The translations under genes were made by a program, and so were the position numbers. This document shows, in pieces, positions 7,308 to 53,074 of a stretch of 64,000 bases of DNA; position 1 is the first letter of the stretch; each line of letters begins with the position of its first letter. Below the pieces are notes generated by a model that was given only the letters and a program-made list of their open reading frames with translations, ran no database searches and had not been told where the DNA came from. Where the stretch lies: positions 186,001 to 250,000 of IMG/VR virus record IMGVR_UViG_3300017917_002466; one strand, written 5' to 3'.

Positions 7308-8747
7308 TTAAACCGCATCAAAAGGATTTGGTTTCTTTACCTCTGGGGATTTGGCCTCTTTCTTCTTTTGCAAGAACTTCTTGAAACCTTGCTTAAGCTG
7401 ATCGGCTTTGGACTTTGCAGTATCACCAACTTCCTCAGCTCCCTTCTTAATTACTTCTCCAGCCTTCTCTACACCAGATTTGACCTTGGTTTCTATATCA
7501 CCTTTTTCGATTGCTTCTTTAGCTTTCTCTATACCAGCCTTTGTTTTAGCTTCTATTCCTTTACCAACTTCCTCAGCTCCCTTTTCAATTTCCTTACTAA
7601 CTTTTTTAGTACCTTTTTCAATTTCTTTACCAACTTTTTCGGCTCCTTGTGTTACTTTTTCTCCGGCCTTTGCTCCCTGTTCTTTTACAATCTCAACAAT
7701 CTTTTCAGCATTCTTCTGTGCCTTTTTAAAAGCTTCTTCACCAGTATCACTCTTAGCAAAGACGTGTTGGCCTGAACCCATAATCATTAATATAAGAGCG
7801 GCAGCAGTTAGAACTTTAGGACTCTTCTTAGCAACAAGGTCAAGAATGTTCTCCTTCAAAATTTCTCCACTAAGAATTTCTTCCTCAAAAGTCAACTGCT
7901 TCTTATCCATCATATGTCTTGCAATATCCATTGCGTGAACGAAATCTTCCTTATTATCATTTAGCCACTGTATCATTTCGTCCTTTGAAAGACCCATGAC
8001 TTCTCCACAAACACCCTTGATCTTTTCCTGAATCCTCTTGAATGCGGCTCTTGCGGCTCCTTTCAAAGCGTCTATTCCTTTTCCTTCTTCAAGAACTCCA
8101 AGCTTCTTTGCCTTGAACTCGGAGAAAGATTCGGTCTTGGTATCATAAGCCTTATCACCCTTTTCCAACTTATCTGTCTTACTTGTACCTGACATATGAG
8201 CTTTATTTGGCTTAATATCCTTTGGTAATTCATAATCAGGTTTAAACTTATCAGAAACAATTGCTTCTCTATCTTCTGTATCAACTACTTCTTGTGGAAC
8301 CATTTTAGTCCAAGTTATCTTACCAATTTCATTTCCTTTAATAACTTCTTTAGTTTCCTCATCCTTCCTATCAGCAGTATCATCTATTAAATTATATTTT
8401 TTAATTTTCTTTTTCATAGCTTCTAAAATAGACTTAATGGGTTGTATAGATGAACCATATGTAAAAAAACTAAAAGGATTTTTTTCTTTAATAAAATTAT
8501 TAACGGCTTCAGCAAAACTAGAAGCAATTTTAGAATTTGAATCGTTTATACTAATTCTATGAGAAATACTGTTTTCAAATTCCAGTATCCAAGTATTAAA
8601 ATCTTCTGAACCATTTCCACCAACAGAATTGCATAATAATGCGTATTCTACTCCATCAACAACAAATCTATTTTCCCATTTTCCAGCCATTCCATTATAA
8701 ATTTGTTGACTTTCTAGTTTTTCTATTAAAATATTTTTAAAAGACAT
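7308..8747 (-). CDS. Putative virion internal polyprotein; CTS-like N-terminus, internal signal-peptide-like segment, K/E/A/G-rich helical repeats
   Basis: MSFKNILIE; internal TESFSEFK; KKSPKVLTAAALILMIMGSGQHVFA; LEA/apolipoprotein-like repeats. Confidence 0.6.
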   Translation of the reverse strand: MSFKNILIEKLESQQIYNGMAGKWENRFVVDGVEYALLCNSVGGNGSEDFNTWILEFENSISHRISINDSNSKIASSFAEAVNNFIKEKNPFSFFTYGSSIQPIKSILEAMKKKIKKYNLIDDTADRKDEETKEVIKGNEIGKITWTKMVPQEVVDTEDREAIVSDKFKPDYELPKDIKPNKAHMSGTSKTDKLEKGDKAYDTKTESFSEFKAKKLGVLEEGKGIDALKGAARAAFKRIQEKIKGVCGEVMGLSKDEMIQWLNDNKEDFVHAMDIARHMMDKKQLTFEEEILSGEILKENILDLVAKKSPKVLTAAALILMIMGSGQHVFAKSDTGEEAFKKAQKNAEKIVEIVKEQGAKAGEKVTQGAEKVGKEIEKGTKKVSKEIEKGAEEVGKGIEAKTKAGIEKAKEAIEKGDIETKVKSGVEKAGEVIKKGAEEVGDTAKSKADQLKQGFKKFLQKKKEAKSPEVKKPNPFDAV

Positions 8748-8770
8748 TTTTAATCCTCCTTTGATAATCT

Positions 8771-8798
8771 TTAATAGTATTTATATAAATACTATTAA
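8771..8798. promoter_or_regulatory. Perfect 28-bp palindrome holding back-to-back T4-type late promoter boxes
   Basis: TTAATAGTATTTAT|ATAAATACTATTAA; TATAAATA on both strands (8778-8785 minus, 8784-8791 plus). Confidence 0.7.
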
Positions 8799-8867
8799 GA
8801 GATTAGACTTAATATTCGTTGTATTAAGTCAACAAGATGAGGTTTCATATCTTGCTGTTCCTCTTAA
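8795..8867 (+). ncRNA. Second type of three-way-junction leader (copy D) before an endonuclease pseudogene
   Basis: TTAAGAG/CTCTTAA; GACTTAATA/TATTAAGTC; CAAGAT/ATCTTG. Confidence 0.5.
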
Positions 8868-8888
8868 CAATATTTATAAAGGTTTCAA

Positions 8889-9394: not shown

Positions 9395-9398
9395 TTTA

Positions 9399-10644: not shown

Positions 10645-12069
10645 TTATTTCCAGTCTTTTATAAACTTTTCAATTGATTTCATATCATTTATATCAATTT
10701 CATTATTAAGTACATAATCTATTGTGTCTTTAATAATTTTACCAAATTGAATTCCTTGTTTAATATCTGGTCTTAATTTCATTATTAAAGCACCATTAAT
10801 AACTTTTTTAACAGGATCAACAATATCTTTACCTTTAACCATATTTCTGACTTTTTCTATTTTTTCTTGAATATCATCCCATTCTTTTTGGTCAAATAAA
10901 CTACCTCTGCTTTTATTATCACAATATGCCGTCTTTTCTAATAAATCAAAATATGGCGATTTAACTAAAGTAGCAACAGTACTATTATTCATTTTTAAAA
11001 TATCAAAAAATTTCATATGATTTTCGGCTACCCATTTTATAGCAGAAATTGTATCATTATCCATCTTCATTCTTTTACCAATTTCTTCTATCATCTTACC
11101 AGATTGTTCAGCATGGCCATGATAAGAATGGGTTCCTTTATCTGTTAATGCATATGTTTTATTTTTACCCAAATCATGCATTAATAAACACCAATTTAAT
11201 AAAGCATTAGGTTCTTTATTTACTTTAAGAACTTCCATGACATGACCGAAAACATTTGGAGATTCTGGATGGTGGTCTGGTGAATGTAACATTGACTCTT
11301 GTTCCACCAATTCAGGAAGAACATATTTCAATATTCCAATATCCTTTAACATAATAATAGCATCTGCAAACTTTGATCCGGATTGTTTTGCCATAGATGT
11401 AAGTTCTTTTAGTATTCTTTCTTGTGCGACCTTCTTTATCTCTGGTGCGTGTGACTTCATTGCTTCTAATGTTTCTTTGTCAATATCAAATCCAAGACGA
11501 GAAGCAAAACGAATTCCACGAAGAACTCTTACTTCATCTTCCTTAAAGCGTAAATTAGGATCACCAACGGCAGCAACCACTTTCTTTTCAATATGGTCTA
11601 ATCCACCATGATGGTCTATAATATTACCATCTTTATCAATACCAAGTTGATTGATTGTAAAATCTCTACGAGAAGCATCATCCTTAAATGATGTTGTAAG
11701 TTCTACTTTGTCAGCTCCTTTACCACCTTCACCAGAATACAAATCTTTTCTATAGGTAGCAATTTCTACGTTTTGACCTTTGTATGGAATAACAGTAACG
11801 CCCATAGCCTTATTCTTTCCAATGTCAATAGTTCTTCCAAATATCTTTTCTATTTCATCTGGAGTAGCATTAGTAGTAATATCAACATCATTTGGATTAT
11901 TACCTAATACCAAATCTCTAACAACACCACCAACCATGAGGGCTTCAAAACCAGCAGCATTGATCTTATCTAAAATCTCAATAGCGTTTCTGATTTCGGG
12001 ATTGCTTTGTTTAATGGAATCCCAGTTATTTAATTTAGTTTCTTGAAAGTAATACTTTTCAAATCTCAT
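10645..12069 (-). CDS. cca: CCA-adding tRNA nucleotidyltransferase (class II) with HD domain; CTS-like N-terminus
   Basis: VGGVVRD, DVDITT, RRDFTIN, EDxxRxxRxIRF, HD motif MHDLGK; starts MRFEKYYFQE. Confidence 0.92.
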   Translation of the reverse strand: MRFEKYYFQETKLNNWDSIKQSNPEIRNAIEILDKINAAGFEALMVGGVVRDLVLGNNPNDVDITTNATPDEIEKIFGRTIDIGKNKAMGVTVIPYKGQNVEIATYRKDLYSGEGGKGADKVELTTSFKDDASRRDFTINQLGIDKDGNIIDHHGGLDHIEKKVVAAVGDPNLRFKEDEVRVLRGIRFASRLGFDIDKETLEAMKSHAPEIKKVAQERILKELTSMAKQSGSKFADAIIMLKDIGILKYVLPELVEQESMLHSPDHHPESPNVFGHVMEVLKVNKEPNALLNWCLLMHDLGKNKTYALTDKGTHSYHGHAEQSGKMIEEIGKRMKMDNDTISAIKWVAENHMKFFDILKMNNSTVATLVKSPYFDLLEKTAYCDNKSRGSLFDQKEWDDIQEKIEKVRNMVKGKDIVDPVKKVINGALIMKLRPDIKQGIQFGKIIKDTIDYVLNNEIDINDMKSIEKFIKDWK

Positions 12070-12620
12070 TTTAATTTTTCCACGTTTAATATTTTAATTA
12101 AAGAATCAGAATAAGCTACATAAATTTTTCCTCTTCCTTGTATATCATCAGCAATAGACCCATAAACATTTAAATCATAAAGAAATTCAGAAGCTTTTTT
12201 ATCACTTTTAAAAGTATCTCTTAATATTCCATAAGTTTGATCTAAATTATAAGTTTCTCTATAACTTTCTAATTCTTCTTTCATATTATTAGCATCTTCA
12301 TCATAACCATTTTCTTCGAGTTTATTAGCTATATCTAAATATATATTTTCAGGAATAAGTTGATCCCATTCATAAAAATTTTCTAATCCATTAATTTTAA
12401 CTTCATATAAAAACATTCCCTGATGTTTTTTACCTAAAAAATTTTCACGAGCATAATATTCAGCCAATTCTATATTATCGGCAAAATATAATCCAAATCC
12501 ATATTTATTTAATCCATCGCCAGTTCCAACTTTATTCAAATCAAATTTATTAAAAGAATAAGCTGATCCATGATAAAGGACTTTAGATTCTTCTGTTAAA
12601 TAATATTCATCGAATTTCAT
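12066..12620 (-). CDS. ADP-ribosyltransferase-like protein; CTS-like N-terminus
   Basis: LYHGS...YGFGLYFADNIELAEYYA...LYEVKI ART-fold motifs; starts MKFDEYYLTEE. Confidence 0.65.
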   Translation of the reverse strand: MKFDEYYLTEESKVLYHGSAYSFNKFDLNKVGTGDGLNKYGFGLYFADNIELAEYYARENFLGKKHQGMFLYEVKINGLENFYEWDQLIPENIYLDIANKLEENGYDEDANNMKEELESYRETYNLDQTYGILRDTFKSDKKASEFLYDLNVYGSIADDIQGRGKIYVAYSDSLIKILNVEKLK

Positions 12621-13141
12621 GATACATACCTTGAAAATCTAGAAGCAGCTAATTTAGCATCTTCTAATGTTTTAATATCTTTACTTCCGTGTTTAATGAA
12701 TGGAGTTTTATCATCATTACTAAAATATTCATCAAATAACTTATCTCCAATTTTAAATCCACAAATTGCACGATGACTCCACCCATACCATTTTTTACTA
12801 GTAGGTGAATAACCAATACTACAAACAGAATGTTTAGGACTTACTTTTTCAAATTGTTTTATTTTAAATTTATCTGATAAATGTTTAGCTGTTTTAGAAT
12901 CACCAATCCAATCACCATTTTCATTGTATGCATTTAGCATTTCAAGTTTACCATTTCCACCATATTCACTATCATCTATTAATTCTTTTTTAATAATATA
13001 ACTACCATGATTTCTAGTAAAAATAATTTCTTTTATTTTGAATGGACTCGCTTCTAATAATATATTTTTAAAAGCTGGTTCTAATAATGATAAAAAATAT
13101 TCAGTTGAGTCTTCATTAAAATATAATTCGTCAAATCTCAT
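12617..13141 (-). CDS. Conserved phage hypothetical protein (WYGWSHRA motif); CTS-like N-terminus
   Basis: MRFDELYFNE; SIGYSPTSKKWYGWSHRAICGF. Confidence 0.7.
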   Translation of the reverse strand: MRFDELYFNEDSTEYFLSLLEPAFKNILLEASPFKIKEIIFTRNHGSYIIKKELIDDSEYGGNGKLEMLNAYNENGDWIGDSKTAKHLSDKFKIKQFEKVSPKHSVCSIGYSPTSKKWYGWSHRAICGFKIGDKLFDEYFSNDDKTPFIKHGSKDIKTLEDAKLAASRFSRYVS

Positions 13142-13143
13142 TT

Positions 13144-13752
13144 TTAATATCCTCTCATTTTTTTTAGTCTTTCTGGGCTATTATTTACAACATTTTTACC
13201 ACTATTTGAAATACCCCCATTAGCTTTTATCAATCCTTTTTGTAATAATGACTGATGTATTTCTTCTGGTACTCTTGGTCTAGCCGATGAAATTAAACTT
13301 TGTTTATAATAAAGATGTTTGAACTCTTCATCGGAAACTTCAGTTGATATATCTGGTAAAAATTTAGAAGCATCAGAAGCGGTATAAATTTCTAATCTTG
13401 GAGGATATGTACCAACTACAGCCATAACAAAACCACTTGGAATTTCGGTTTCTCCGCCAATTTCTTTTCCAGTAATTGCTCCATCTCCTTCCATACCGCT
13501 TCTTGTAAAAGAAAAAGGTACTTCAATAGCTTTATTATTAGAAACCAATTTAAACATTTGATAATATTCTCTATCAGCTTCATGCCAAGGTATATCTACT
13601 TTTATAGTTCCTTTTTGAATTAATCTAATATGAGAATTAATTTTTTTATAAAGTTTTTCATCAGCCCATTTCAAAATTTCAATTGGAACTTGTTTTCTAT
13701 CTAAATTTACATTTTCTATTAAATATTTTTCTAGTTCTGATAAGAAACTCAT
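13144..13752 (-). CDS. Hypothetical protein; CTS-like N-terminus
   Basis: Start 13752 by RBS spacing; MSFLSELEKYLIE. Confidence 0.7.
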   Translation of the reverse strand: MSFLSELEKYLIENVNLDRKQVPIEILKWADEKLYKKINSHIRLIQKGTIKVDIPWHEADREYYQMFKLVSNNKAIEVPFSFTRSGMEGDGAITGKEIGGETEIPSGFVMAVVGTYPPRLEIYTASDASKFLPDISTEVSDEEFKHLYYKQSLISSARPRVPEEIHQSLLQKGLIKANGGISNSGKNVVNNSPERLKKMRGY

Positions 13753-13833
13753 AACCATTCTCCTATTAGTTCATATAATCTGGAAACTTCGCATTTGGAA
13801 ATAAATTTAATAAAATTGGTTTAATTTTTTTAA

Positions 13834-14313
13834 TTAATTTTTTTCTTCTTTTGGATATTCATTTATTTCCAAAACTTCATCTTCTTTAATATTTATATCT
13901 TCTTTAACCATAGTTACTTGTCCTTTCATTCTATTTTCTTCTTTAAATCCTTTTGCTAACAAAATCTTTTCCATTGTTGGATTAACAACATATGCTCTTA
14001 TTATAGGTTCATCAAAAGCTTCTTTGTCTTGATTATATGTATCAATTGCAATATCAACCAATCTCTTTCCAACTCCCTTACCTTGAAAATCATCACGAAC
14101 TACAACATCAAAAGAGAATTCTCCACTTAACCAAGTTGTCCAAAGTGCACCAACTACTTCATTATTTAAAATAGCAACTGTATGAATTTCTTTATCTGAT
14201 AGGACTCCAATATCATATTTCTTGGCCATTTTATAGGCATCATCTATATGCTTTGAGTCTAGCTCATCTGCATAAACATATGCAACATTTTCATAAAATT
14301 CTACAAAGTTCAT
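13834..14313 (-). CDS. GNAT N-acetyltransferase; CTS-like N-terminus
   Basis: VVVRDDFQGKGVGKRL motif A; MNFVEFYE. Confidence 0.85.
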   Translation of the reverse strand: MNFVEFYENVAYVYADELDSKHIDDAYKMAKKYDIGVLSDKEIHTVAILNNEVVGALWTTWLSGEFSFDVVVRDDFQGKGVGKRLVDIAIDTYNQDKEAFDEPIIRAYVVNPTMEKILLAKGFKEENRMKGQVTMVKEDINIKEDEVLEINEYPKEEKN

Positions 14314-14693
14314 GTTATATCTTTAAGTACCTTTTGGAAAACTTTCTTGCCCAAAGGAGTAAAACCGCCCGTCTTCTTCCTATGTTCTGGGTATTTTTCC
14401 CAAAACTCTTTAGCAAGCAAAGTTCCTATTCCCTGTTTTTGAAATTCTTGAACCACCGATAAATCAGTTTCATCACCACCAAGTTTAAGAATAAATCCGA
14501 CTTCTTGAATACCAATTTTTGCTATGATTCCTTCCCCATTATCATATAGCTTTACTTTTCCAACCATCTTATAAGGCTTCAATCCATCTGTCATACCTTC
14601 CATATCTCCGATATGCAGAACTGGTCTTGAAGAATTCGGAATATCTTTTCCGTAATCTTCTATATTTTCTTTATAAAAGCTTATAAAGTTCAT
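14310..14693 (-). CDS. GNAT-like acetyltransferase; CTS-like N-terminus
   Basis: VVQEFQKQGIGTLL motif A; MNFISFYKE. Confidence 0.7.
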   Translation of the reverse strand: MNFISFYKENIEDYGKDIPNSSRPVLHIGDMEGMTDGLKPYKMVGKVKLYDNGEGIIAKIGIQEVGFILKLGGDETDLSVVQEFQKQGIGTLLAKEFWEKYPEHRKKTGGFTPLGKKVFQKVLKDIT

Positions 14694-15322
14694 TTTGTTT
14701 CCTTCACCTTTCCTGGAATAAAAACTTCAAGATGATCTCTACTTATAAATCCACCCTTACCTCTTTTGTAAGGGTCTGCTATTGGTCTTGGCTTTCCTTT
14801 CTCTTGACCTAACCACTTATCACCTTTAAGTGACTTAATATCTCTTGATACAACTTTATTTAAAAGTAATGGTAAATCTTTAGTATCTACTTTAACCCAA
14901 GAACCTTTATATTCTTTACCAACTCCAAATTCTTTTGCCTCTTGAACAAAATGACACCAAATATCTCCGTGATGCTGAAACTTCTTAATAGGTGGAAATC
15001 TATACTCTGGTTCTCCATACTCGTCCGTTCCAATCTTAACCATCATTTCCTTATTCCACGCTGCAAGAAAAGGCTCAATATAAGGCCAGATATATGCATA
15101 GATTCCTCTATGCTCTGGTGCGTGATGGAATCCAACAATCGGACTTCCGAGTTCTTCACTTTTAGAAAACGCCTTTTCCTTTCTCTTATCTTGCTTGGGG
15201 TTCATATGACCCCAACGAGCAAACATAATTTTAGGAGCCTTCTCAGATTTTTCTCTTGCCTTTACTCTGATAGGCTCCTCGTCTTCATCGTCATAATAAT
15301 AGGCTTCAAATTGATTAATCAT
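14690..15322 (-). CDS. Hypothetical protein; CTS-like N-terminus
   Basis: MINQFEAYYYDD; coupled operon. Confidence 0.7.
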   Translation of the reverse strand: MINQFEAYYYDDEDEEPIRVKAREKSEKAPKIMFARWGHMNPKQDKRKEKAFSKSEELGSPIVGFHHAPEHRGIYAYIWPYIEPFLAAWNKEMMVKIGTDEYGEPEYRFPPIKKFQHHGDIWCHFVQEAKEFGVGKEYKGSWVKVDTKDLPLLLNKVVSRDIKSLKGDKWLGQEKGKPRPIADPYKRGKGGFISRDHLEVFIPGKVKETK

Positions 15323-15686
15323 AAAAATCTATTACGTCTGCCTCATTAAAAGCTATTTCCATATTATATTCATTTATTTGAACATCGCTTATATCTTTAT
15401 TTTGTAACAACTCGTTTTTTATCTTAACAATAGTTTCTGGTGGAACTCTACCATTATATGCTTTGCTCGTAATAGGAAATGAGATATATGCATCAAATTT
15501 ATGGATTCCAGTAGGAACATCTTTCTTTTTGATTTCTCCATCAATTTCAATTCCATATTGACTCAAGTATTCTTTTAATTCATTAACGCGAATGTCTGCT
15601 ATCATAAACATATCTTCATCAGCACCTACAGTAACAAAAGAAGATTTGGATTCAAGCGCCTCTTTTAAATATTCATTAAAACTCAT
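15315..15686 (-). CDS. Hypothetical protein; CTS-like N-terminus
   Basis: Start 15686 (MSFNEYLKEALES). Confidence 0.7.
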   Translation of the reverse strand: MSFNEYLKEALESKSSFVTVGADEDMFMIADIRVNELKEYLSQYGIEIDGEIKKKDVPTGIHKFDAYISFPITSKAYNGRVPPETIVKIKNELLQNKDISDVQINEYNMEIAFNEADVIDFYD

Positions 15687-15687
15687 A

Positions 15688-16293
15688 TTATGCTCCTTCA
15701 CTCTTTTCTTCCGGGTCTGAAAGGTGGAAATCTATTTGATCTTTGAACTTAAAGAAGTCTACAAGGTAAACATCGTTATCAGTCCAATTGATAAGCTCAA
15801 ACTTTTTCTCATCATCCATATCTTTAGGAAACGAAACCCATTCACTATTCTCATAATCCCAATACTTTTTGAAAGCATCTATTGGAACCATATGAGCAAC
15901 TGCTACAGAATGTCCCTGCTTTTCAATATCCATTGCCTTTGCGGAATCGTCTGTAACCATAACAAGCTTACCTTCTGTAAACTTATCATAAGAACCTTCT
16001 GGTCTATCCGCTGAATAGTAAACTATAAAAGTTCTCTTTGGTTTTTGTGTTACTTGTGGTTCAGATGGTGGTGTATTGAAATCTGTATTGCTTCTATCTC
16101 CACCAAGCTTCTGTTGTCTCTTGATTTTGACTTCCAATGGAGCATACTTCCACTGATCTTCTTTAGGAAGACTCTTTACCTTAATCTTATTACGCTGGCC
16201 GGATTTAGTCCTATGCCAAACATATCTTTGGCGCCAGTCGTCGTTAGGATTTCTTTCTTCTGTTAGTAAACAGAAAAATTGAAAATCATTCAT
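15688..16293 (-). CDS. Hypothetical protein; CTS-like N-terminus
   Basis: MNDFQFFCLLTEE; coupled operon. Confidence 0.7.
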   Translation of the reverse strand: MNDFQFFCLLTEERNPNDDWRQRYVWHRTKSGQRNKIKVKSLPKEDQWKYAPLEVKIKRQQKLGGDRSNTDFNTPPSEPQVTQKPKRTFIVYYSADRPEGSYDKFTEGKLVMVTDDSAKAMDIEKQGHSVAVAHMVPIDAFKKYWDYENSEWVSFPKDMDDEKKFELINWTDNDVYLVDFFKFKDQIDFHLSDPEEKSEGA

Positions 16294-17819: not shown

Positions 17820-17822
17820 AAT

Positions 17823-18011
17823 TCATTCCTTTTGTATTGATGAAACTTCTGCTTTGGTTACTTGTTTCTTTTTCTTTCTTGCTTTATTTTCTGCTTCCTT
17901 TGCATTCTTGGCTTGTAAAAATCCAACTTTTGGTTTTCCTTTTTCAACGTAAGAAACTTTATATGTTAAATCTTTCTGAAAAGATTCTAAAAAATATTCT
18001 AAAAATGACAT
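17823..18011 (-). CDS. Small basic protein; CTS-like N-terminus
   Basis: MSFLEYFLES; TATAAATA at 18062-18069. Confidence 0.65.
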   Translation of the reverse strand: MSFLEYFLESFQKDLTYKVSYVEKGKPKVGFLQAKNAKEAENKARKKKKQVTKAEVSSIQKE

Positions 18012-18027
18012 TAGCTAACTATTCCAT

Positions 18028-19212: not shown

Positions 19213-19239
19213 TTAAATAATTCTCTTTCTCCTATTTTA

Positions 19240-19269
19240 TTATTTGAAATAGTGATCTAAAAATCTTAA
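19240..19269 (-). pseudogene. Orphan copy of the N-terminal tag of the Gp88-like gene
   Basis: Encodes LRFLDHYFK*; differs from ATG AGA TTT TTA GAC CAT TAC TTT AAA (17793-17819) only at synonymous positions after codon 1. Confidence 0.65.
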
Positions 19270-19280
19270 CTTAATTAATT

Positions 19281-19508
19281 TTATTTCTTATTATATTCAT
19301 GTAATTGTCTAAGAGCAATTTCTGCGTTTGAAAAGCTTGTGTGCCAATTAGTAGTTAAACCACATGGACACGAATATCTATAATTTTGACCATACTTATC
19401 TTTTTCTTTTTTAATTTCTGGTTTAGCTTTATTATGGCATGAACTATATACAACACTTGGAATAGATTCTTTATTAATTTTTTCTTTTAAATATTCTTGA
19501 AAACTCAT
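19281..19508 (-). CDS. Small Cys/His protein; CTS-like N-terminus
   Basis: MSFQEYLKE; CH...CPCG. Confidence 0.65.
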   Translation of the reverse strand: MSFQEYLKEKINKESIPSVVYSSCHNKAKPEIKKEKDKYGQNYRYSCPCGLTTNWHTSFSNAEIALRQLHEYNKK

Positions 19509-46275: not shown

Positions 46276-46860
46276 TTATCTTTTGAACGAATAATAGAAG
46301 TCTACTAAACTTCTATCCTTCTTTACTTTTTCAAATACTTCCTTGGAGTCTTTATTGGTTCTTATGATTTTGTAATCTTCTACGGGGTTTCTTTCGCCGG
46401 TTTCTGATCTTTGCTGGGATTGCTTGATTGCGACTTCTTCGGGAACATCTATGTGAATGAGCACTGTTGTAAATCCATTTGCCTTTGCAAGCTGAAGTTT
46501 CGCAATAGTTCCATTTAGATTTGCATTAGTACCAGTATGAATGAAGGATTCTTTTTTAGTAAAGGCTATTGGGAGTTCTTTTTTAAACTGAGAGGTAGCT
46601 TTACCGGCGAGTTCTCTTTTGTATTCTCCGCCGCCTATCTTAGAAGCTAAAATATCTACATCATAAACTGGTAAGTTACCAACTACTTTCTTTAGAACAT
46701 TATCAATGAAGTATGTCTTTCCTGAACCAATTCCACCACCAACGGAAATAAAGAGCTTATCTTCTAAATAGGTCTTCAAGTCGTCAATATTGTTTAACGA
46801 CCTACCATAAAAGGTATCGCTCTCGTAAAACTCAATAAAGTTATGGATTTGGTAGGTCAT
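46276..46860 (-). CDS. P-loop kinase (zeta-toxin/AAA_33-like); CTS-like N-terminus
   Basis: GGIGSGKT, DVD, R-x3-R lid; HNFIEFYES; start moved to MTYQ. Confidence 0.75.
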   Translation of the reverse strand: MTYQIHNFIEFYESDTFYGRSLNNIDDLKTYLEDKLFISVGGGIGSGKTYFIDNVLKKVVGNLPVYDVDILASKIGGGEYKRELAGKATSQFKKELPIAFTKKESFIHTGTNANLNGTIAKLQLAKANGFTTVLIHIDVPEEVAIKQSQQRSETGERNPVEDYKIIRTNKDSKEVFEKVKKDRSLVDFYYSFKR

Positions 46861-47257
46861 AAGAAGAATCCCCTCGCATTGCATCATCTACGGCTAAAGG
46901 TTTATAACTCTGTGGTGGTTTTGGTTCTTCCTTTGGAAGTATCTTTACCTTCTCCACCTTATCTTGAATGTTTCGCAGAAATTTACTCTTTGCTTTATTA
47001 ATGATTTCGTGAATTCTCTGCTTGACCTTCTTTATATATGAGTTATCACCTTGCATATACTGTCGGATTTCGTTTCCAACAGCCACATCAAAATCGCCGT
47101 AGTTAGGGAATCTTCTTTCAAGATAGTTACAAAGTCTTGAAACAAATGCAGGATTTAAACCAACTGAAGCAGACTCTTCCTCTATCAGAAGTTTTACTTC
47201 ATTGGTGAAAGCTTTGGCTTCGCTTTCTTGAAAATAATGATCTTGAAATTTCTTCAT
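46841..47257 (-). CDS. Hypothetical protein; CTS-like N-terminus
   Basis: MKKFQDHYFQES. Confidence 0.7.
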   Translation of the reverse strand: MKKFQDHYFQESEAKAFTNEVKLLIEEESASVGLNPAFVSRLCNYLERRFPNYGDFDVAVGNEIRQYMQGDNSYIKKVKQRIHEIINKAKSKFLRNIQDKVEKVKILPKEEPKPPQSYKPLAVDDAMRGDSSYDLPNP

Positions 47258-48204
47258 TATAGCATTGTCTTTTCTGAAAGGTATATAGTAGATTCTTTCA
47301 AATGACTTTCAAGATTACTTCTTAACCTCTTTATAACTTCGTCTTCATTCTGTTTCAAACAAAATGCCGATACAATGAATTCTCTTAGCTGTGCAAAGGT
47401 GAAATCCTTTGTCTTCTCAGCCAACTCCATAATCCTCTTTTCATCCTGATGTTCCTTTAGCTTTGCTTTTAAGTAGGCATATCTTCCAGTTGTTGGTGGA
47501 TTTCCAATCTCTATCTTCCTATCAAATCTGGAAGCTCTAAGAATTCTAGGAGGAAGTCTATCAATATAGTTAGTTGTTCCAAGAAACAATACATTGTTGG
47601 TCTGTGCATCACCATCAAAAAGCTCAAGGATAGCGTGTTCTCCATACTTTACAATCTCGTCAATGTCTTCCATAATGACAAGAATCTTTCTCTCTGGCTC
47701 AACTTCTCTTACAACTTTAAGTGCTTCAACAAGGTCGTGTGCTTCTCTAGTAATGAAAACTATGTTACCCTTACTTACCATATCTTCCATTGCTAACTTC
47801 AAAAGTGCACTCTTACCACTTCCCGGTTGACCATAAAGAAGAACTCCTCTCTTATGAGTGAATCCATACTTCTTAAAATCATCCTTCAATGTCCAGAAGT
47901 TATCAATCTCTTGAAGTATCTTAGTATAACGAGAATCTTCAAAGCGAAGAATATCATCAGTATTAATATCGTGAACTTCAAAGAAAACACCAGACATATT
48001 TCTCTGTATTCTGAAAACACCAGCGGGAATAGTCTTCTCGGTTACTACTTCACCAACAGGCTGAAAAGAATTACCTTGCACGATATACTTCTTGTAAATC
48101 TGCTTTCTCTTACTTGGTTGTGTTGAAAGAACCTTTGGACCAATATCAATTGGTTCAGCCTTTAAACAGGATTGATTTTCTTTGATAAATTCTCTAAAGC
48201 TCAT
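47257..48204 (-). CDS. AAA+ ATPase; CTS-like N-terminus
   Basis: GQPGSGKS, MEDID, TTN, RASRFD; MSFREFIKE. Confidence 0.92.
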   Translation of the reverse strand: MSFREFIKENQSCLKAEPIDIGPKVLSTQPSKRKQIYKKYIVQGNSFQPVGEVVTEKTIPAGVFRIQRNMSGVFFEVHDINTDDILRFEDSRYTKILQEIDNFWTLKDDFKKYGFTHKRGVLLYGQPGSGKSALLKLAMEDMVSKGNIVFITREAHDLVEALKVVREVEPERKILVIMEDIDEIVKYGEHAILELFDGDAQTNNVLFLGTTNYIDRLPPRILRASRFDRKIEIGNPPTTGRYAYLKAKLKEHQDEKRIMELAEKTKDFTFAQLREFIVSAFCLKQNEDEVIKRLRSNLESHLKESTIYLSEKTML

Positions 48205-48503
48205 ATTAAAACCCCCTTTCCTAAAATATCTTCAACCATCCATCTTGCTCTTGTTTGAATCTTTGCAATAAGCTCTTCTTTATCTTGAACTACTGCACCT
48301 TTCTTAATGGCTATTCCAATTGCTTCAGCAGCTTCTCTTGCCTTTATCATAGCGTTACTTAACTTTATAACATTTGAATTAAGCAACTTTTGATAGTCTT
48401 TTCCTTTTGGTTGTTGTGCCAAAGGGGATTCTATTGGCTCTTCACCAATGGCTTCACCTAGGTATCTTTCAGCTTCACCTAGGTATTTTTTGTAATCTTT
48501 CAT
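48201..48503 (-). CDS. Hypothetical protein; CTS-like N-terminus duplicated in tandem
   Basis: MKDYKKYLGEAERYLGEA; 15-bp repeat GCTTCACCTAGGTAT; TATAAATA at 48522-48529. Confidence 0.65.
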   Translation of the reverse strand: MKDYKKYLGEAERYLGEAIGEEPIESPLAQQPKGKDYQKLLNSNVIKLSNAMIKAREAAEAIGIAIKKGAVVQDKEELIAKIQTRARWMVEDILGKGVLI

Positions 48504-48524
48504 ATTACTTACCCCGTATAATAT

Positions 48525-49937
48525 TTATAAATTCTTTAATCTTATAATATTAGCTATTTCTTCTTTTTCTTCGGTTGTTAAAATCTCTGGTGTCCATTTC
48601 ATTGATTTTAGATATTCCAAATTGTTTCTTATATTAGAAGCTGAAATTTTTTCATCCGATTCTTCGCCCACTCTACCGAATTCCATAATCCGTACTTTAG
48701 AGTATTTATCTTTATGTTTTACAAAATAATCATACTTCTTCGTATCGCCTTCTGTTCCTCCGATAAGAACCTGACTAACTTCGTTCTGGTGAGTATCCAC
48801 CCAATCGTATATATCTTTAACCGGTGTTATTTTACTTAACAATATTTCAACTGGTTTGTTGATATGCCTTATATAAACTTCCCATATCTTTTTAGATTGT
48901 TCGGCTGTGATAGTTTCTCCTTCTCTCAGCTTATGACCAATAAAAATGATTATCTTATCAGACTGTTTTGATAGTTGTTCAACTATACTAAAATGTCCTT
49001 TGTGTGGTGGTTTAAACCCACCGGCATACAATCCTATAATTCCAGCATCACTACTTTCCCAAAAGTAATGTTCAACAAAGTTGCCAGAGAAAGCCTGTTT
49101 GATTTTATTAATGGCTCCCAATTTCATTTTTTCTTTTGCTGTTCCAACTTCACCAGATTTAACTGATACTAAAGATTGAAAGGTACCAGGGATTCTTCTT
49201 CTTGATCTTGGCTGTTTAACTTGTTTATTAACTGAATCTAATAGTTCATCGAAGCTACTATATATGTTATAATTGTGAAACAGTTTTTCCACATCAGGCC
49301 AATTAGTTGTAGACCAAACATCTATATGTCCAACATCTCTACTATCTTTAACATCAACGACTCTTAAAGTTAACTTATTAGAGGAAAGATTAAATTCATA
49401 CTCTTGATCTTTTTCTAATGCGGGCACTTTTCTAATTCCTAATTTCTTAAAAACAGTATTGTAATCTTCTTCTAACAACAACACTTTAGCCAAAGCCACC
49501 AGTATGCCTTGTTTATCTGCCGGTAGATTTAGGAACTGTTCTTTGAAATCATATTCCTCTGTGGACAAAGCAATGATATTATCTATTTGAATATTACCTT
49601 CAGCCCCAACAATAGGATACAAAATCGTAATTATTTCACCTGAATTATAATACTTACGTCCTTTATATAGTGAAGATTGGAAAGGAACAATAACTCTATC
49701 TGGCATAGATGATACATAATCTATAATTGCTTTTTTGACTGCTTTCTTATCGTTTCCCTTAAAATGAACTACTATATCTAAATCACCATAATCATCTTTG
49801 GATTTTATTTTAGCACTACCTGTTAATTTGGCATTTTGAAAATCAGGAATATTTTGTAGTACTTTTCTCTGATAATCAGCAAAAGTTCTATCAACATTGC
49901 TTTTTAGTATTCTGGAACCACCAGCAACTCCACTCAT
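48525..49937 (-). CDS. Pol-beta-superfamily nucleotidyltransferase fused to an HxGH cytidylyl/adenylyltransferase domain
   Basis: TGS...YGDLDIV...QIDN; GGFKPPHKGH; internal NFVEHYFWES at the junction. Confidence 0.8.
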   Translation of the reverse strand: MSGVAGGSRILKSNVDRTFADYQRKVLQNIPDFQNAKLTGSAKIKSKDDYGDLDIVVHFKGNDKKAVKKAIIDYVSSMPDRVIVPFQSSLYKGRKYYNSGEIITILYPIVGAEGNIQIDNIIALSTEEYDFKEQFLNLPADKQGILVALAKVLLLEEDYNTVFKKLGIRKVPALEKDQEYEFNLSSNKLTLRVVDVKDSRDVGHIDVWSTTNWPDVEKLFHNYNIYSSFDELLDSVNKQVKQPRSRRRIPGTFQSLVSVKSGEVGTAKEKMKLGAINKIKQAFSGNFVEHYFWESSDAGIIGLYAGGFKPPHKGHFSIVEQLSKQSDKIIIFIGHKLREGETITAEQSKKIWEVYIRHINKPVEILLSKITPVKDIYDWVDTHQNEVSQVLIGGTEGDTKKYDYFVKHKDKYSKVRIMEFGRVGEESDEKISASNIRNNLEYLKSMKWTPEILTTEEKEEIANIIRLKNL

Positions 49938-50890: not shown

Positions 50891-50930
50891 TATTAGTTCC
50901 TTTCTTTAATAGATAATAACATTTTCTTTT

Positions 50931-50975
50931 TCAAAAATCAACAAGCCAACCAAATTATTAGTTTGATTGGCTTGT
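50931..50975 (-). terminator. Intrinsic terminator
   Basis: ACAAGCCAATCAAA/TTTGGTTGGCTTGT stem then TGATTTTT. Confidence 0.7.
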
Positions 50976-51025
50976 CTTCAAATCAATTCCTCTCTTTTTG
51001 TTTATTTCAACTTGAAGCCATTTCC

Positions 51026-53074
51026 TTATCCCTTGAAACCACCTTTCTTATATTCTGGTGGCAAAGCTGGTGCACTAATCTTCTCTACTTTTTGACCAGT
51101 CTTACCCGGCTTAGCTGTAAAGCTTCCCTTTGGAGCAGCCTTGGAAGGAGCCTTTGGTGCACTACCAACCTTCTCAATCTTCTTTGGTGGTGCTTTTGGC
51201 TTTGCTGTCAATGCTGTTGATGGGCCTTTCTTAGCAGGAGAAGATGGTGCAGATGGAATCTTCTCAATCTTCTCACCTGGCTTGCTTGGCTTTGCTGTCA
51301 ACGCTGCTGTTGGGCCCTTGACAACTGGTGCCTTTGGAGCTGGCTTAATTGAAGCAATAGTCTGATTGATAACACCTGGCTTAGAAGTTAATCCACCACC
51401 TTGAGTAGTTGCCATCTTTGGAGGTGTCAATGCATCTTCGTCAAGATCAAAGTATTTATTAGCGGCAATCTTTACAAAGCTAAGAGACTCTTCCTGACTT
51501 CCAGAGGCTTCTTCATCATCGTCTTCTGATTCCTCTCCCTCTTTTTCATCATCCTCAGATTCCTTTGGTTTCTCTGCTTCTTCTTCAGCAGGAGCAGCTT
51601 CTTCCTCACCACCAAGTTCAGCAGAAGTCTTCTGAAGCAACCATTCAAACGGGTCGCCAGTTCTTGCCTTCATTGTTCCATATGGCATTTCATCTGCATA
51701 GTAATCCATCAATGCCTGATAAAGCTCATCTGATGGATCGTTCTGTGGGTCTGCTATCCAAGCCTTAAGCTCTTCAAACTGTTCAGGAGAAAGGGCTTTC
51801 TGAAGTCCAACTGATCCTAGCTCTTCCTCACCCTTATCACAAGGAACACATTCTTCTGCACCGGCTGGGCAAGACTTTTCCTCTGCTTTCTCAGAATCTT
51901 CTAATTTTTCTGTTTCTTCTTCAGCATTAGGTGAAACTGCACTCTTTGCTAGTTCACCAAGGGTCTGTTCCATTTCTTCAATCTGCTCAAGATCAAAATA
52001 GTTTTCTGTTCCTTCCTTATCAATACAAATAACTTCGTTATTCTCAGTAATAGAATTGACCTTATACCACTTGCTTTCAACCTTTACAAGAGTATTGATA
52101 AGCTTTTGAAGATCAAGACTCTCAAGTTCAGTAGAACCAATTACACGAACAGGAGCAACGATACATTCTTCTGCATCGCCTTCTTCCTCACCTTCACCGG
52201 CGGCAATATCTTCCCAATCAATTTCCCCAGCATCCTCAGGCTCTTCACCTGCATCCTCTGGTTCCTCGCCAGCATCCTCAGGCTCTTCACCTGCGTCTTC
52301 TGGCTCTTCACTAACATCCTCTGATTCATCACCAAACTCATCAGCTTCAGAAACAAGCTTCTTATTACTTGAAGTAGATTCTTCTTCAGTTCCAGAAATT
52401 TCTTCCTCGGATGCACCGGCTCCCTCTGATTCTCCCTCGGCCGGTTCTTCCTCGGACTCTCCCTTCTCAACCTTAAATCCCTTGAAAAGATTCTCAAGTG
52501 AATCTACAAATGCCTTTGCTTCTTCTTCGTCTTCAAAATCGTGTTCAGACTTTTCAAGACCAGTGTTTTCAGAAGGCTCAACCGTTACTTTGTTATCCAC
52601 AACGGAAACTTTTACTACCTTCTCATCTTCTCCTTCTCCACCAACCGATCCTCCCATTTCTGTTCCAAGTTCCTCAGTTGGCTCTACCTCGTCCATTTCT
52701 TCCTTGACTACATCCTTCTTACCTTTCTTACTTTCAGTTTCCATTCCAGTAACAGAAGTACGTGTTGAACCCTTCTGAACATCTCCTGTATTAATAATAA
52801 TTTTAACATCCCCTTCTTCTAAAGAGTTTATTTTTTCAATAATATAATTCAAATTTTCTTTAACAAAAATAGAATCTATATTTTTAGGAGAAATTTTTGG
52901 ATTTACAAACTCATTTTGAATTTTAAAGATAGCATTCTTTTTATCAATATATGGTTCGTCAAATGCTGCTTTAATTACTTCAATTACTTTATTCCATTTT
53001 TCAGAAATAATCTTCTCAGTAGAAGAAACATCTTCTTTATAATTTTCCTTTAAATAGCTTAAAAATTCCAACAT
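51026..53074 (-). CDS. Large acidic low-complexity protein with P/K/A-rich C-terminal repeats; CTS-like N-terminus (head core/scaffold-like)
   Basis: Start 53074 (AGGAG RBS, MLEFLSYLKE); E/D-rich body; basic repeats KGPxxALTAKPxxPxxKIEK. Confidence 0.7.
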   Translation of the reverse strand: MLEFLSYLKENYKEDVSSTEKIISEKWNKVIEVIKAAFDEPYIDKKNAIFKIQNEFVNPKISPKNIDSIFVKENLNYIIEKINSLEEGDVKIIINTGDVQKGSTRTSVTGMETESKKGKKDVVKEEMDEVEPTEELGTEMGGSVGGEGEDEKVVKVSVVDNKVTVEPSENTGLEKSEHDFEDEEEAKAFVDSLENLFKGFKVEKGESEEEPAEGESEGAGASEEEISGTEEESTSSNKKLVSEADEFGDESEDVSEEPEDAGEEPEDAGEEPEDAGEEPEDAGEIDWEDIAAGEGEEEGDAEECIVAPVRVIGSTELESLDLQKLINTLVKVESKWYKVNSITENNEVICIDKEGTENYFDLEQIEEMEQTLGELAKSAVSPNAEEETEKLEDSEKAEEKSCPAGAEECVPCDKGEEELGSVGLQKALSPEQFEELKAWIADPQNDPSDELYQALMDYYADEMPYGTMKARTGDPFEWLLQKTSAELGGEEEAAPAEEEAEKPKESEDDEKEGEESEDDDEEASGSQEESLSFVKIAANKYFDLDEDALTPPKMATTQGGGLTSKPGVINQTIASIKPAPKAPVVKGPTAALTAKPSKPGEKIEKIPSAPSSPAKKGPSTALTAKPKAPPKKIEKVGSAPKAPSKAAPKGSFTAKPGKTGQKVEKISAPALPPEYKKGGFKG
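52227..52310 (-). repeat. 4 x 21-bp coding tandem repeat (EEPEDAG)
   Basis: Units 1 and 3 identical (CCAGCATCCTCAGGCTCTTCA on plus). Confidence 0.95.

What the first reader, a model, noticed from the sequence alone, without database searches (positions are those of the whole stretch)
7308..53074. About 24 genes share an N-terminal capsid-targeting-like peptide: a putative packaged and injected enzyme arsenal
Seen: N-termini in 7.3-22 kb and 46-53 kb fit M-x(1-2)-F-x-[ED]-[YF]-[YFL]-x-E: MRFEKYYFQE (CCA), MKFDEYYLTEE (ART-like), MRFDELYFNE, MNFVEFYE and MNFISFYKE (GNATs), MSFNEYLKE, MRFLDHYFKD (Gp88-like), MSFLEYFLES, MSFQEYLKE, MILFSDFYLSE, MAFLEILKE, HNFIEFYES (kinase), MKKFQDHYFQE, MSFREFIKE (AAA), MKDYKKYLGE, MLEFLSYLKE, plus weaker cases. 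The motif is essentially absent from early, glycan-island, tail and endonuclease genes, and several blocks follow TATAAATA boxes. Established: T4 internal proteins IPI-III carry the 10-aa CTS MKTYQEFIAE, removed by prohead protease gp21 after Glu, and are ejected with the DNA. Inference: this phage loads many catalytic proteins into its head for immediate host takeover or anti-defence, a far larger cargo set than T4's.
Basis: partly seen in the sequence, partly recalled or inferred. Interest (0 to 1): 0.85.

Follow-up and report, generated by a model that had tools for sequence, protein, structure and literature searches.

The report
Capsid-targeting tag on ~20 phage proteins
An uncultured 250-kb relative of phage T4 puts the same 9-10-residue N-terminal peptide, a close match to T4's capsid-targeting sequence, on about 17-21 unrelated proteins, including several enzymes and an anti-defence protein, which suggests it pre-loads them into its head; this enlarges a known T4 mechanism rather than revealing a new one.

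Summary
A weight matrix trained only on tags from other phages puts 15 of 79 window proteins above the 99.9th percentile of internal positions (0.3 expected). Two more qualify with a different start or offset, and about four are weak. The tagged proteins share nothing but the tag, codons vary freely, and upstream DNA is not conserved.

The window is part of a 253,664-bp T4-like metagenomic contig. Elsewhere on that contig I found a T4-type portal, a gp21-type prohead protease, a gp22-type scaffold and gp23. Four further tagged small genes sit between gp13 and gp15. The T4 gp23 cleavage site (L-T-E) is conserved in this phage's gp23.

The tag keeps the four T4 CTS positions mapped as functional: aromatic, aromatic, aliphatic, Glu. 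TATAAATA late-promoter boxes sit 19-53 nt upstream of the tagged operons. Glycan-island, tail, baseplate and early-type genes lack the tag. Relatives carry the same tag on other cargo.

Best reading: these are T4-type capsid-targeting propeptides, cut by the gp21 homologue. The cargo includes a CCA-adding enzyme, an ADP-ribosyltransferase, a Tad6 Thoeris inhibitor, GNATs, an AAA ATPase and a kinase. Packaging, cleavage and ejection are inferred, not shown. I rate it a new variant of a known kind.

The parts
51026..53074 (-). 682-aa protein of unknown function, N-terminus MLEFLSYLKE (exact T4 register: F4, Y7, L8, E10). JGI called an upstream start at 53155.
   Evidence: PWM score 15.2. AAGGAG lies 7 nt upstream of the ATG at 53074. 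No Pfam or NCBIfam hit.
48522..48529 (-). TATAAATA late-promoter-like box, 19 nt upstream of the first gene of the 48.5-46.3 kb tagged operon
48201..48503 (-). 100-aa tagged protein, MKDYKKYLGE, with a duplicated YLGEA
   Evidence: PWM 11.3; sequence
47257..48204 (-). 315-aa AAA ATPase, tag MSFREFIKE
   Evidence: PF00004 6e-16; PWM 14.9; matches the strict T4-derived regex
46841..47257 (-). 138-aa tagged protein, MKKFQDHYFQE. It belongs to a conserved family whose orthologues in relatives also carry the tag, some of them near head modules.
   Evidence: PWM 11.1. Orthologues start MNFAEHYFNE, MIKFSQYYLVE and MEKIYEAFLDE.
46276..46860 (-). 194-aa P-loop kinase (AAA_33/zeta-toxin-like) with an offset tag, MTYQIHNFIEFYES
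   Evidence: Pfam; PWM 8.9 at offset 7; orthologue in L011
22115..22122 (-). TATAAATA box 53 nt upstream of the tagged gene at 22062
21700..22062 (-). 120-aa tagged protein, MAFLEILKE
   Evidence: PWM 10.5; strict regex hit
21267..21656 (-). 129-aa tagged protein, MILFSDFYLSE
   Evidence: PWM 11.5
19281..19508 (-). 75-aa basic tagged protein, MSFQEYLKE, with a TATAAATA box at 19534-19541
   Evidence: PWM 20.5
17823..18011 (-). 62-aa basic tagged protein, MSFLEYFLES, with a TATAAATA box at 18062-18069
   Evidence: PWM 7.7
16293..17819 (-). 508-aa GP88/DUF7227-like protein, tag MRFLDHYFKD (Asp in place of the terminal Glu)
   Evidence: PWM 8.6. Atlas hits to PF17338 are a lead only. The orthologue in L005 starts MRFTEHYNQPE, 47% identical overall.
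15315..15686 (-). 123-aa tagged protein, MSFNEYLKE
   Evidence: PWM 19.3. An identical tag sits on a gene between gp15 and the terminase gene in L097.
14310..14693 (-). 127-aa protein with a weak GNAT match, tag MNFISFYKE
   Evidence: PF13508 5e-4, below the Pfam cut-off; PWM 10.7
13834..14313 (-). 159-aa GNAT acetyltransferase, tag MNFVEFYEN
   Evidence: PF13508/PF00583; PWM 9.4
12617..13141 (-). 174-aa Tad6-family protein (type I Thoeris inhibitor), tag MRFDELYFNE followed by a ~35-aa linker
   Evidence: PF25188 1.4e-36, covering residues 47-174 = profile 8-145; PWM 12.3
12066..12620 (-). 184-aa ADP-ribosyltransferase (ART-PolyVal), tag MKFDEYYLTE
   Evidence: PF18760 2.8e-7; PWM 17.6
10645..12069 (-). 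474-aa CCA-adding/poly(A) polymerase-type nucleotidyltransferase with an HD domain, tag MRFEKYYFQE followed by a ~30-aa linker
   Evidence: PF01743 4e-28 starting at residue 45. phrog_2244 covers residues 41-448 = profile 3-378. PWM 12.3.
7308..8747 (-). 479-aa coiled-coil-like protein with a weak tag, MSFKNILIEK, and a TATAAATA box at 8778-8785
   Evidence: PWM only 1.4
13144..16293 (-). Three interleaved weak candidates: 13144-13752 (MSFLSELEKYLIE), 14690-15322 (MINQFEAYYYDD) and 15688-16293 (MNDFQFFCLLTEE)
   Evidence: Loose pattern only; PWM <5. The orthologue of 16293 in L005 starts MSILDHLLNE.
2380..2937 (-).
   Evidence: PWM 7.9; Pfam listing

Best explanation
The shared N-terminal peptide is this phage lineage's version of the T4 capsid-targeting sequence (CTS). 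It comes in two lengths: M-x-F-x-E-[YF]-[LI]-x-E, and a form one residue longer, M-x-F-x-[DE]-[YHL]-Y-[FL]-x-E.

Proposed mechanism. Late in infection the tagged proteins are made from TATAAATA-type promoters together with the head proteins. The tag binds them to the gp22-type scaffolding core while the gp23 shell closes around it. The gp21-type prohead protease then cuts after the terminal Glu ([LIFY]-x-E), which releases the mature cargo inside the head. The cargo leaves with the DNA at the next infection, so it can act before any phage gene is expressed.

Shown here: the tag and its statistics; its restriction to two late-promoter-headed blocks plus the head module; the presence of gp20, gp21, gp22 and gp23 in the same genome; conservation of the gp23 cleavage motif; and conservation of the tag across a clade.

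Inferred: binding to the core, cleavage, retention in the head, ejection, and action at the start of infection.
For: Statistics: (15 of 79 proteins against 0.3 expected; Fisher p=2.5e-7 for block against non-block genes).

Selection acts on the peptide, not the DNA. There is no paralogy between tagged proteins at E<=1e-3. Ser uses five codons from both codon families. F, Y and E codon use mirrors genome usage. Upstream DNA is 35% identical, the level of unrelated sequence.

Match to T4. IPII and IPIII start MKTYQEFIAE and IPI starts MKTFKEF (PMC8442874). This phage has MSFQEYLKE, MSFREFIKE and MSFKEFIRE. Residues 4 and 7 (targeting) and 8 and 10 (processing) are the mapped determinants in T4, and gp21 cuts after L/I-x-E (PMC9026906).

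Same contig. It encodes Portal_T4 9e-97, Peptidase_S77 5e-23, T4_CASP 1e-12 and Gp23 5e-85. Four tagged genes (MSYKKYLKE, MSFKYYLRE, MSFKEFIRE, MSFKDFVKE) lie between gp13 and gp15. JGI's own gene call gives the same start for the second of these.

Protease and cleavage site. The gp21 homologue is 33% identical to T4 gp21 and keeps the GEL-HP and S-RG-G-L blocks. The T4 gp23 cleavage site FLTE|A aligns with VLTE|T.

Late promoters. Ten of 14 gene-strand TATAAATA boxes end 19-53 nt upstream of starts, including 48503, 22062, 19508, 18011 and 8747. The same box precedes head and sheath genes in L105.

Clade-wide use. The relaxed tag occurs on 31 of 465 ORFs in the gp23 loci of relatives, all on the gp23 strand. 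In other T4-like loci it occurs on 13 of 832, several of which are gp15 false positives. Tagged blocks are seen in L005, L008, L011 and L097. Orthologue pairs keep the tag pattern while its sequence drifts.

The tag is appended. Family profiles begin at residue ~41-47 in the CCA enzyme and Tad6.

Precedent for cargo type: T4 Alt is a packaged ADP-ribosyltransferase, and IPI* is an injected anti-restriction protein.
Against: There is no direct evidence of packaging, cleavage or ejection, because the phage is known only from metagenomes.

T4's own IP tags score 5.6-6.4 with the clade matrix, just under my threshold of 7. The similarity is therefore one of pattern and is not proof of common descent.

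The longer tag class ends in F-x-E or Y-x-E rather than T4's L/I-x-E. One cargo ends in Asp, which in T4 blocks processing.

Mature cargo is not uniformly basic as T4 IPs are (pI 4.4-10).

The total TATAAATA count is only modestly above shuffles (24 against 16.1±3.7), so the promoter argument rests on placement. A gp55-type late sigma factor was not located.

About half of the contig was not examined.
Confidence: 0.7

Rival explanations
1. The tag does target proteins to the prohead core, but these proteins are assembly components. They would be extra scaffold or core proteins, like T4 gp67/gp68, that are degraded and expelled, not delivered cargo acting in the next host.
For: The four tagged genes in the head module are small, acidic or E-rich after the tag, and sit between gp13 and gp15. 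The 479-aa coiled-coil-like protein at 7308-8747 resembles a scaffold.
Against: At least eight tagged proteins have enzyme or anti-defence domains (CCA, ART, Tad6, GNAT, AAA, kinase). Such domains have no obvious role in shell assembly. T4 shows that enzymes carrying such propeptides (Alt) are retained and ejected.
Confidence: 0.1
2. The motif is a shared N-terminal helix with a function unrelated to the virion, for example a recognition peptide for a phage chaperone (a DnaJ-domain gene follows one tagged operon), a degron, or an oligomerisation or localisation signal.
For: A DnaJ-domain protein lies at 45744-46265, next to the tagged operon. No direct virion data exist.
Against: This does not explain three things: why the tag matches T4's CTS at exactly the mapped positions and ends in the gp21 cleavage motif; why it occurs on genes embedded in the head/neck module of this and related phages; or why the operons carry late-promoter boxes.
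Confidence: 0.1
3. The similarity is a nucleotide-level feature, such as a translation-initiation enhancer or a recombination cassette at gene starts like the mobile regulatory cassettes of T4-type phages, and is not a peptide signal.
For: AT-rich codons for F, Y, K, E and N are favoured at 5' ends in a 30% GC genome. Shuffling cassettes are known in T4-type phages (PMC2839356, listed).
Against: Upstream regions are not conserved (35% identity). Ser in the tag uses AGT, AGC, TCA, TCT and TCG, and Leu uses four codons. Third-position identity (0.44) is no higher than first- and second-position identity (0.49). Relatives with 42-44% GC keep the same peptide.
Confidence: 0.03
4. Chance or compositional artefact of an AT-rich proteome.
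For: F, Y, K, E, I and L are common residues here.
Against: Shuffling residues 2-14 gives a mean of 0.11 (strict) and 1.4 (relaxed) hits, against 5 and 17 observed. The independent matrix gives 15 against 0.3 expected. The tag is absent from 44 early-type ORFs and from tail and baseplate genes of the same genome.
Confidence: 0.01

Closest known systems
[quoted passage not shown]
   Same: Both are ~10-residue N-terminal peptides with aromatic, aromatic, aliphatic and Glu residues at equivalent positions, ending in the gp21 motif [L/I]-x-E. Both are carried by otherwise unrelated proteins. Both occur with gp21 and gp22 in the genome and with late promoters. Cargo in both includes an ADP-ribosyltransferase and anti-defence proteins.
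   Different: Most tags here are one residue shorter (M-x-F against M-K-T-Y). A second class, one residue longer, ends in F/L-x-E. There are about 19-25 tagged genes per genome against 4-5 in T4. The cargo includes a CCA-adding enzyme, Tad6, GNATs, an AAA ATPase, a kinase and a 508-aa GP88-like protein. The cargo is not uniformly basic. Nothing has been verified experimentally.
Polymorphic internal-protein loci of T-even phages (diverse IPs sharing only the CTS; PMC3012670, PMC9026906)
   Same: The same principle applies: a portable tag lets new proteins, presumed to act against host defences, be recruited into the head. Cargo sets differ between relatives (L005, L011 and L097 against the window).
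   Different: The known cases are small basic proteins in coliphages. Here the tag is spread over two operon blocks plus the head module in an uncultured jumbo-sized lineage at 30-44% GC, and it is fused to recognisable enzymes.
Ejection proteins of phiKZ-like and SPN3US giant phages (PMC5694885, PMC7411985)
   Same: Many head-internal proteins, including enzymes (virion RNA polymerase), are processed by a gp21-related protease after Glu and delivered to the host.
   Different: Their propeptides are long (often >100 residues), no short shared tag is known, and no gp22 counterpart has been confirmed. Here the machinery is canonical T4-type and the tag is short and portable.
Phage P1 Dar system, and the 'polyvalent proteins' of phages and conjugative elements (the source of the ART-PolyVal Pfam family)
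   Same: Both are anti-defence or enzymatic proteins delivered along with the DNA.
   Different: P1 uses ordered incorporation dependent on DarA/Hdf, not an N-terminal tag (PMC9024508, PMC12810830). Polyvalent proteins fuse many domains into one giant polypeptide. Here each domain is a separate gene with its own tag.

Membership tests
T4-type CTS / prohead-core targeting system | A short (~10 aa) N-terminal peptide shared by otherwise unrelated proteins | tested here: met
   15-17 proteins carry it. They show no pairwise BLASTP similarity beyond the tag.
T4-type CTS / prohead-core targeting system | Targeting determinants: aromatic residues at the positions equivalent to T4 CTS residues 4 and 7 | tested here: met
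   F or Y is followed three residues later by Y, F or H in all robust tags. Three tags (53074, 48503, 47257) are in the exact T4 register. The determinants come from PMC9026906.
T4-type CTS / prohead-core targeting system | Processing determinants: an aliphatic residue at position 8, Glu at position 10, and the gp21 motif L/I-x-E | tested here: met
   The short class ends in [LI]-x-E. The longer class ends in [FL]-x-E. One tag ends in Asp (17819) and a few are irregular (14313, 18011).
T4-type CTS / prohead-core targeting system | A gp21-type prohead serine protease and a gp22-type scaffold encoded by the same phage | tested here: met
   On the same contig at 17-39 kb: Peptidase_S77 5e-23, T4_CASP 1.4e-12, Portal_T4 and Gp23. 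The protease is 33% identical to T4 gp21.
T4-type CTS / prohead-core targeting system | The protease specificity is conserved, as judged from the major capsid protein propeptide junction | tested here: met
   T4 FLTE(65)|A aligns with VLTE(50)|T in this phage's gp23. The relative L097 has VLGE|A.
T4-type CTS / prohead-core targeting system | Late expression together with the head proteins | tested here: inconclusive
   TATAAATA boxes end 19-53 nt upstream of the tagged operons and of the head and sheath genes. No transcript data exist, and gp55 was not located.
T4-type CTS / prohead-core targeting system | Physical incorporation into proheads, removal of the tag, and ejection with the DNA | not testable with these tools
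   The phage is uncultured. This needs virion proteomics or reconstitution.
T4-related phages (gp20, gp21, gp22 and gp23 head module; RegA) | Core head genes in T4 order, together with regA | tested here: met
   The order is gp20, a small ORF, gp21, gp22, gp23, gp13, gp15, terminase, sheath, tube, baseplate. RegA matches phrog_242 at 2.6e-30.
Tad6 (type I Thoeris inhibitor, PF25188) | A Pfam match above the gathering score | tested here: met
   126 bits against a cut-off of 27, over residues 47-174. ThsB binding was not tested.

The most novel reading that the evidence does not exclude
A clade of uncultured, roughly 250-300-kb T4-related phages has turned the CTS into a general loading system. 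More than 20 separately encoded proteins per genome would be pre-packed in the head and injected. They include a Thoeris inhibitor, a tRNA CCA-repair enzyme, an ADP-ribosyltransferase, acetyltransferases, an AAA ATPase and a kinase. Two tag length classes may sort abundant small internal proteins from low-copy enzymes. If so, much of this phage's anti-defence and takeover activity would act before any transcription, and the tag could serve as a sequence-only predictor of injected proteins in metagenomes.
Probability: 0.5. Interest if true: 0.75.

Novelty: new variant of a known kind. Interest (0 to 1): 0.62.

Why it matters
If the tag works as in T4, a 9-10-residue motif predicts from sequence alone which proteins a whole lineage of large environmental phages injects with its DNA.

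Predicted cargo would then include a member of a known anti-defence family (Tad6) and a tRNA-repair enzyme. That would mean counter-defence can be delivered as protein, before the window in which early genes must be expressed.

It would also give phage engineers a second, naturally diversified set of packaging tags. And it would mark the unknown tagged proteins (508 aa, 682 aa and several small ones) as candidates for new anti-defence or takeover functions.

Tried and rejected
- Megablast of 35 kb of the window against 50,697 phage records found nothing. tblastn with the 508-aa protein found only a weak haloarchaeal virus hit. There is therefore no cultured relative with a virion proteome.
- Walking along the contig 10 kb at a time from the window reached only more small early-type genes, so I stopped.
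- I tried to reach the head module through a sheath protein of a tagged relative. As a single query it did not return this contig. The gp23 of relative L097 as a single query did find it.
- One look-up failed because the ORF I called differs from the gene on record.
- NCBIfam gave nothing for ten unknown tagged proteins. The atlas gave only a lead (GP88/DUF7227) for the 508-aa protein and nothing for the 682-aa one.
- Paralogy as the source of the shared N-terminus was rejected. A DNA-level signal was rejected. Compositional chance was rejected.
- T4 IP tags were not recovered above threshold by the clade matrix. I therefore do not claim sequence homology of the tags, only the same pattern at the mapped positions.
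- No structure prediction was run. The tools fold single chains only, so they cannot test whether the tag binds the scaffold.

Full report
WHAT THE WINDOW IS. The window is bases 186,001-250,000 of JGI metagenome contig Ga0192394_135657, which is the same record as IMGVR_UViG_3300017917_002466 (253,664 bp). It has about 30% GC, and nearly all genes lie on the minus strand. No phage in GenBank is close at the DNA level. It encodes a RegA translational repressor (phrog_242, 2.6e-30). The best tblastn matches to RegA are only 41-43% identical and fall in T4-related phages.

THE OBSERVATION. I tested them in three ways.

First, I used a regex written from T4's CTS alone, [FYW]-x-[ED]-hydrophobic-hydrophobic-x-E. 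It hits 16 times in six frames, and five hits directly follow M-S or M-A at an ORF start. That is 5 N-terminal hits against 0.13 expected from the internal rate and 0.11 from shuffling residues 2-14.

Second, a relaxed pattern gives 17 against 0.75-1.4 expected.

Third, to avoid circularity, I trained two weight matrices only on tags from other contigs. I then scored every position of the 79 window proteins. Fifteen N-termini exceed the 99.9th percentile of 19,190 internal positions (0.3 expected). Scores drop from 7.7 to 2.5 with nothing in between.

Two more proteins qualify on closer inspection. MLEFLSYLKE at 53074 scores 15.2 and has a perfect AAGGAG 7 nt upstream, whereas JGI's start is 27 codons further up. 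The kinase has the tag five residues in (score 8.9). Four or five others (8747, 13752, 15322, 16293, 9734) fit only a loose hydrophobic pattern. So the count is 15-17 robust and about 21 with weak cases, which makes 'about 24' a mild over-count.

With the loose pattern, 19 of 30 genes in the two blocks hit, against 4 of 49 elsewhere (Fisher p=2.5e-7). No score of 7 or more occurs in any of these:
- the 22-46 kb sugar-modification island;
- the tail-fibre-like genes at 53.9-63.8 kb;
- the + strand endonuclease genes;
- 44 ORFs at contig 156-177 kb;
- the sheath, tube and baseplate genes.

THE SIGNAL IS A PEPTIDE. The tagged proteins show no BLASTP similarity to one another at E<=1e-3. Within the tags, Ser is encoded by AGT, AGC, TCA, TCT and TCG. 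Leu uses four codons. F, Y and E codon use mirrors the genome. The 30 nt upstream are 35% identical, no more than unrelated sequence. Relatives at 42-44% GC keep the same peptide. In the CCA-type nucleotidyltransferase and the Tad6-family protein, the family profiles start only at residue 41-47. The tag plus a linker is therefore an addition to the catalytic body.

THE HEAD MACHINERY OF THE SAME PHAGE. A DNA pattern for M-S-F-x-E-[YF]-[LI]-K-E found the three window genes plus tagged genes in other IMG/VR contigs. In two of those contigs the tagged small genes sit between gp15 and the terminase gene, or next to a Gp23-family gene.

Fetching around that gp23 (L097, from a 264-kb relative) showed this gene order: Portal_T4, a 62-aa ORF, Peptidase_S77, T4_CASP, Gp23, gp13, three tagged genes, gp15, one tagged gene, terminase, sheath.

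Using that gp23 as the query returned this contig at 17-39 kb with 86% identity (L105). There I found:
- Portal_T4 (9e-97), Peptidase_S77 (5e-23), T4_CASP (1.4e-12) and Gp23 (5e-85);
- four tagged genes between gp13 and gp15, starting MSYKKYLKE, MSFKYYLRE, MSFKEFIRE, and MSFKDFVKE (a cupin-domain protein);
- JGI's own gene call, which gives the same start for the second of these.

The protease is 33% identical to T4 gp21 across the conserved His and Ser blocks. BLASTP of the two major capsid proteins aligns T4's cleavage site FLTE|AEIGG (residue 65) with VLTE|TSQG (residue 50). I take this to mean that the L-x-E specificity is retained.

COMPARISON WITH T4. These T4 N-termini come from the T4 record itself:
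- IPII and IPIII: MKTYQEFIAE|A
- IPI: MKTFKEF...
- gp24: MAKINELLRE|S
- gp21: ...LLIE|T

PMC8442874 gives the same CTS. PMC9026906 reports three relevant findings. Targeting depends mainly on CTS residues 4 and 7, and processing on residues 8 and 10. Asp at position 10 blocks processing but not targeting. gp21 cuts after L/I-x-E.

The tags here keep aromatic, aromatic, aliphatic and Glu at exactly those relative positions. Most have one residue fewer before the first aromatic, and three are in the exact T4 register. A second class carries one extra aromatic (F-x-[DE]-[YHL]-Y-[FL]-x-E). It sits mostly on the larger enzymes, while the short class sits on small proteins and in the head module.

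T4's own tags score 5.6-6.4 with the clade matrix. That is in the top 0.3% of positions but below my cut-off. I therefore claim the same pattern, not demonstrable homology.

TIMING. Fourteen TATAAATA boxes lie on the gene strand. Ten end 19-53 nt upstream of a start codon, although only 5.3% of the window is intergenic. They precede the tail-fibre-like gene at 63825 and the first genes of the tagged operons (48503, 22062, 19723/19508, 18011), as well as 10533, 9734 and 8747. The same box precedes head and sheath genes in L105 and in L097. The sugar-modification island has none on the gene strand. This fits late expression but does not prove it.

CARGO. These tagged proteins have a recognisable domain:
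- a CCA-adding/poly(A)-polymerase-type enzyme with an HD domain (474 aa);
- an ART-PolyVal ADP-ribosyltransferase (184 aa);
- a Tad6-family Thoeris inhibitor (174 aa, 126 bits);
- one clear and one weak GNAT;
- an AAA ATPase;
- a zeta/AAA_33-type kinase;
- a DUF6557 protein.

The 508-aa protein resembles GP88/DUF7227 by language-model features only, which is a lead and not a finding. The remaining tagged proteins are unknown. Tad6 is reported to bind ThsB (PMC13728456). T4 provides the precedent for a packaged ADP-ribosyltransferase (Alt) and an injected anti-restriction protein (IPI*).

A CLADE-WIDE FEATURE. In the gp23-centred loci of 28 relatives, 31 of 465 ORFs carry the relaxed tag, all on the gp23 strand. 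In 79 other T4-like loci the figure is 13 of 832, and several of those are the conserved gp15 start. L005 (47% identical in the 508-aa protein) has its own block of eight tagged genes next to glycosyltransferases. L011 has five in a row, two of them orthologues of window genes. Orthologue pairs keep the pattern while the residues drift. For example, MKKFQDHYFQE corresponds to MNFAEHYFNE, MIKFSQYYLVE and MEKIYEAFLDE.

VERDICT. The best explanation (confidence about 0.7) is a T4-type capsid-targeting propeptide that is removed by the gp21 homologue. In this lineage it has been extended to about 19-25 genes per genome, several of them enzymes or anti-defence proteins.

The principle is established for T-even phages. 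PMC3012670 states that their internal proteins are diverse defence proteins sharing only a CTS. PMC9026906 suggests the CTS is an evolutionary device for loading varied proteins. What is new here is the scale, the kinds of cargo, the two tag classes, and the occurrence in an uncultured jumbo-sized lineage.

Packaging, cleavage and ejection remain inferences. About half of the contig was not examined.

Noticed in passing
window 22161-44174: A large sugar-modification island without tags or late-promoter boxes. It holds a GT2+GT1 fusion (22161-23825), a hexapeptide acyltransferase (24667-25104) and an O-methyltransferase (25108-25674). It also holds a C-methyltransferase (29498-30676) and two paralogous B12-binding radical SAM genes (32569-34074 and 34749-36257, 54% identical). 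Further genes are a GT17+methyltransferase fusion (36260-37675) and another radical SAM gene (39313-40245). It may build a methylated or acylated glycan for DNA or the virion surface.
   Followed up: partly
window 1642-2406 and 19837-20757 (+ strand); 3404-4084 (+); L105 17131-20247: The few + strand genes are endonuclease-like. Two are paralogues (48% identical; DUF723/DUF4379 zinc-finger type) and one is an HNH gene. In the head module, the terminase large-subunit gene is split into N- and C-terminal ORFs by a 333-aa DUF7487 ORF.
   Followed up: partly
window 145-675 and contig 166-186 kb (L002, L006): Just beyond the window start lies an NAD salvage set (nicotinamidase/isochorismatase, NAD synthase, NMNAT-like, NUDIX, NAPRTase). 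Next to it are tRNA-repair-type genes (RlaP, Thg1, PTH2) and a patatin. RlaP starts MIYTDLFVQE, which is a weak tag-like N-terminus.
   Followed up: no
window 48201-48503: The 100-aa tagged protein begins MKDYKKYLGEAERYLGEAIGEE. The YLGEA unit is duplicated, giving two possible cleavage sites in tandem. YLGE|A matches the VLGE|A propeptide junction of gp23 in relative L097.
   Followed up: no
window 45744-46265: A DnaJ-domain protein (173 aa) directly follows the tagged operon at 48.5-46.3 kb, and a calcineurin-like phosphoesterase follows it at 45202-45747. A co-chaperone role for the cargo is only a guess.
   Followed up: no
window 10645-22062 compared with L105 13544-15389: There are two tag length classes. 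The 7-residue core (F-x-E-Y-L-K-E) sits on small proteins and on all four head-module genes. The 8-residue core (F-x-[DE]-[YHL]-Y-[FL]-x-E) sits mainly on larger enzymes (CCA, ART, Tad6, GP88-like, kinase). Relatives L005, L011 and L125 show the same split.
   Followed up: partly
window 53434-53897: The regA gene is preceded by a TATAAATA box ending 40 nt upstream of its likely ATG (53850). It lies next to tail-fibre-like genes rather than the clamp-loader and polymerase genes that flank regA in T4.
   Followed up: no
L051 982-2415, L023 5172-6608, L054 8487-9920: In unrelated T4-like metagenomic loci, a 477-478-aa protein just upstream of the sheath gene starts MERFTKFLTEE, MKLFNNFLEEE or MEKFNQYFTEK. 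These score 8-15 with the tag matrix. The protein has no BLASTP match to T4 gp15-gp24.
   Followed up: partly
window 18028-19212: A lysine-2,3-aminomutase-like radical SAM gene (394 aa, LAM_C 3e-21) sits untagged inside the tagged block.
   Followed up: no
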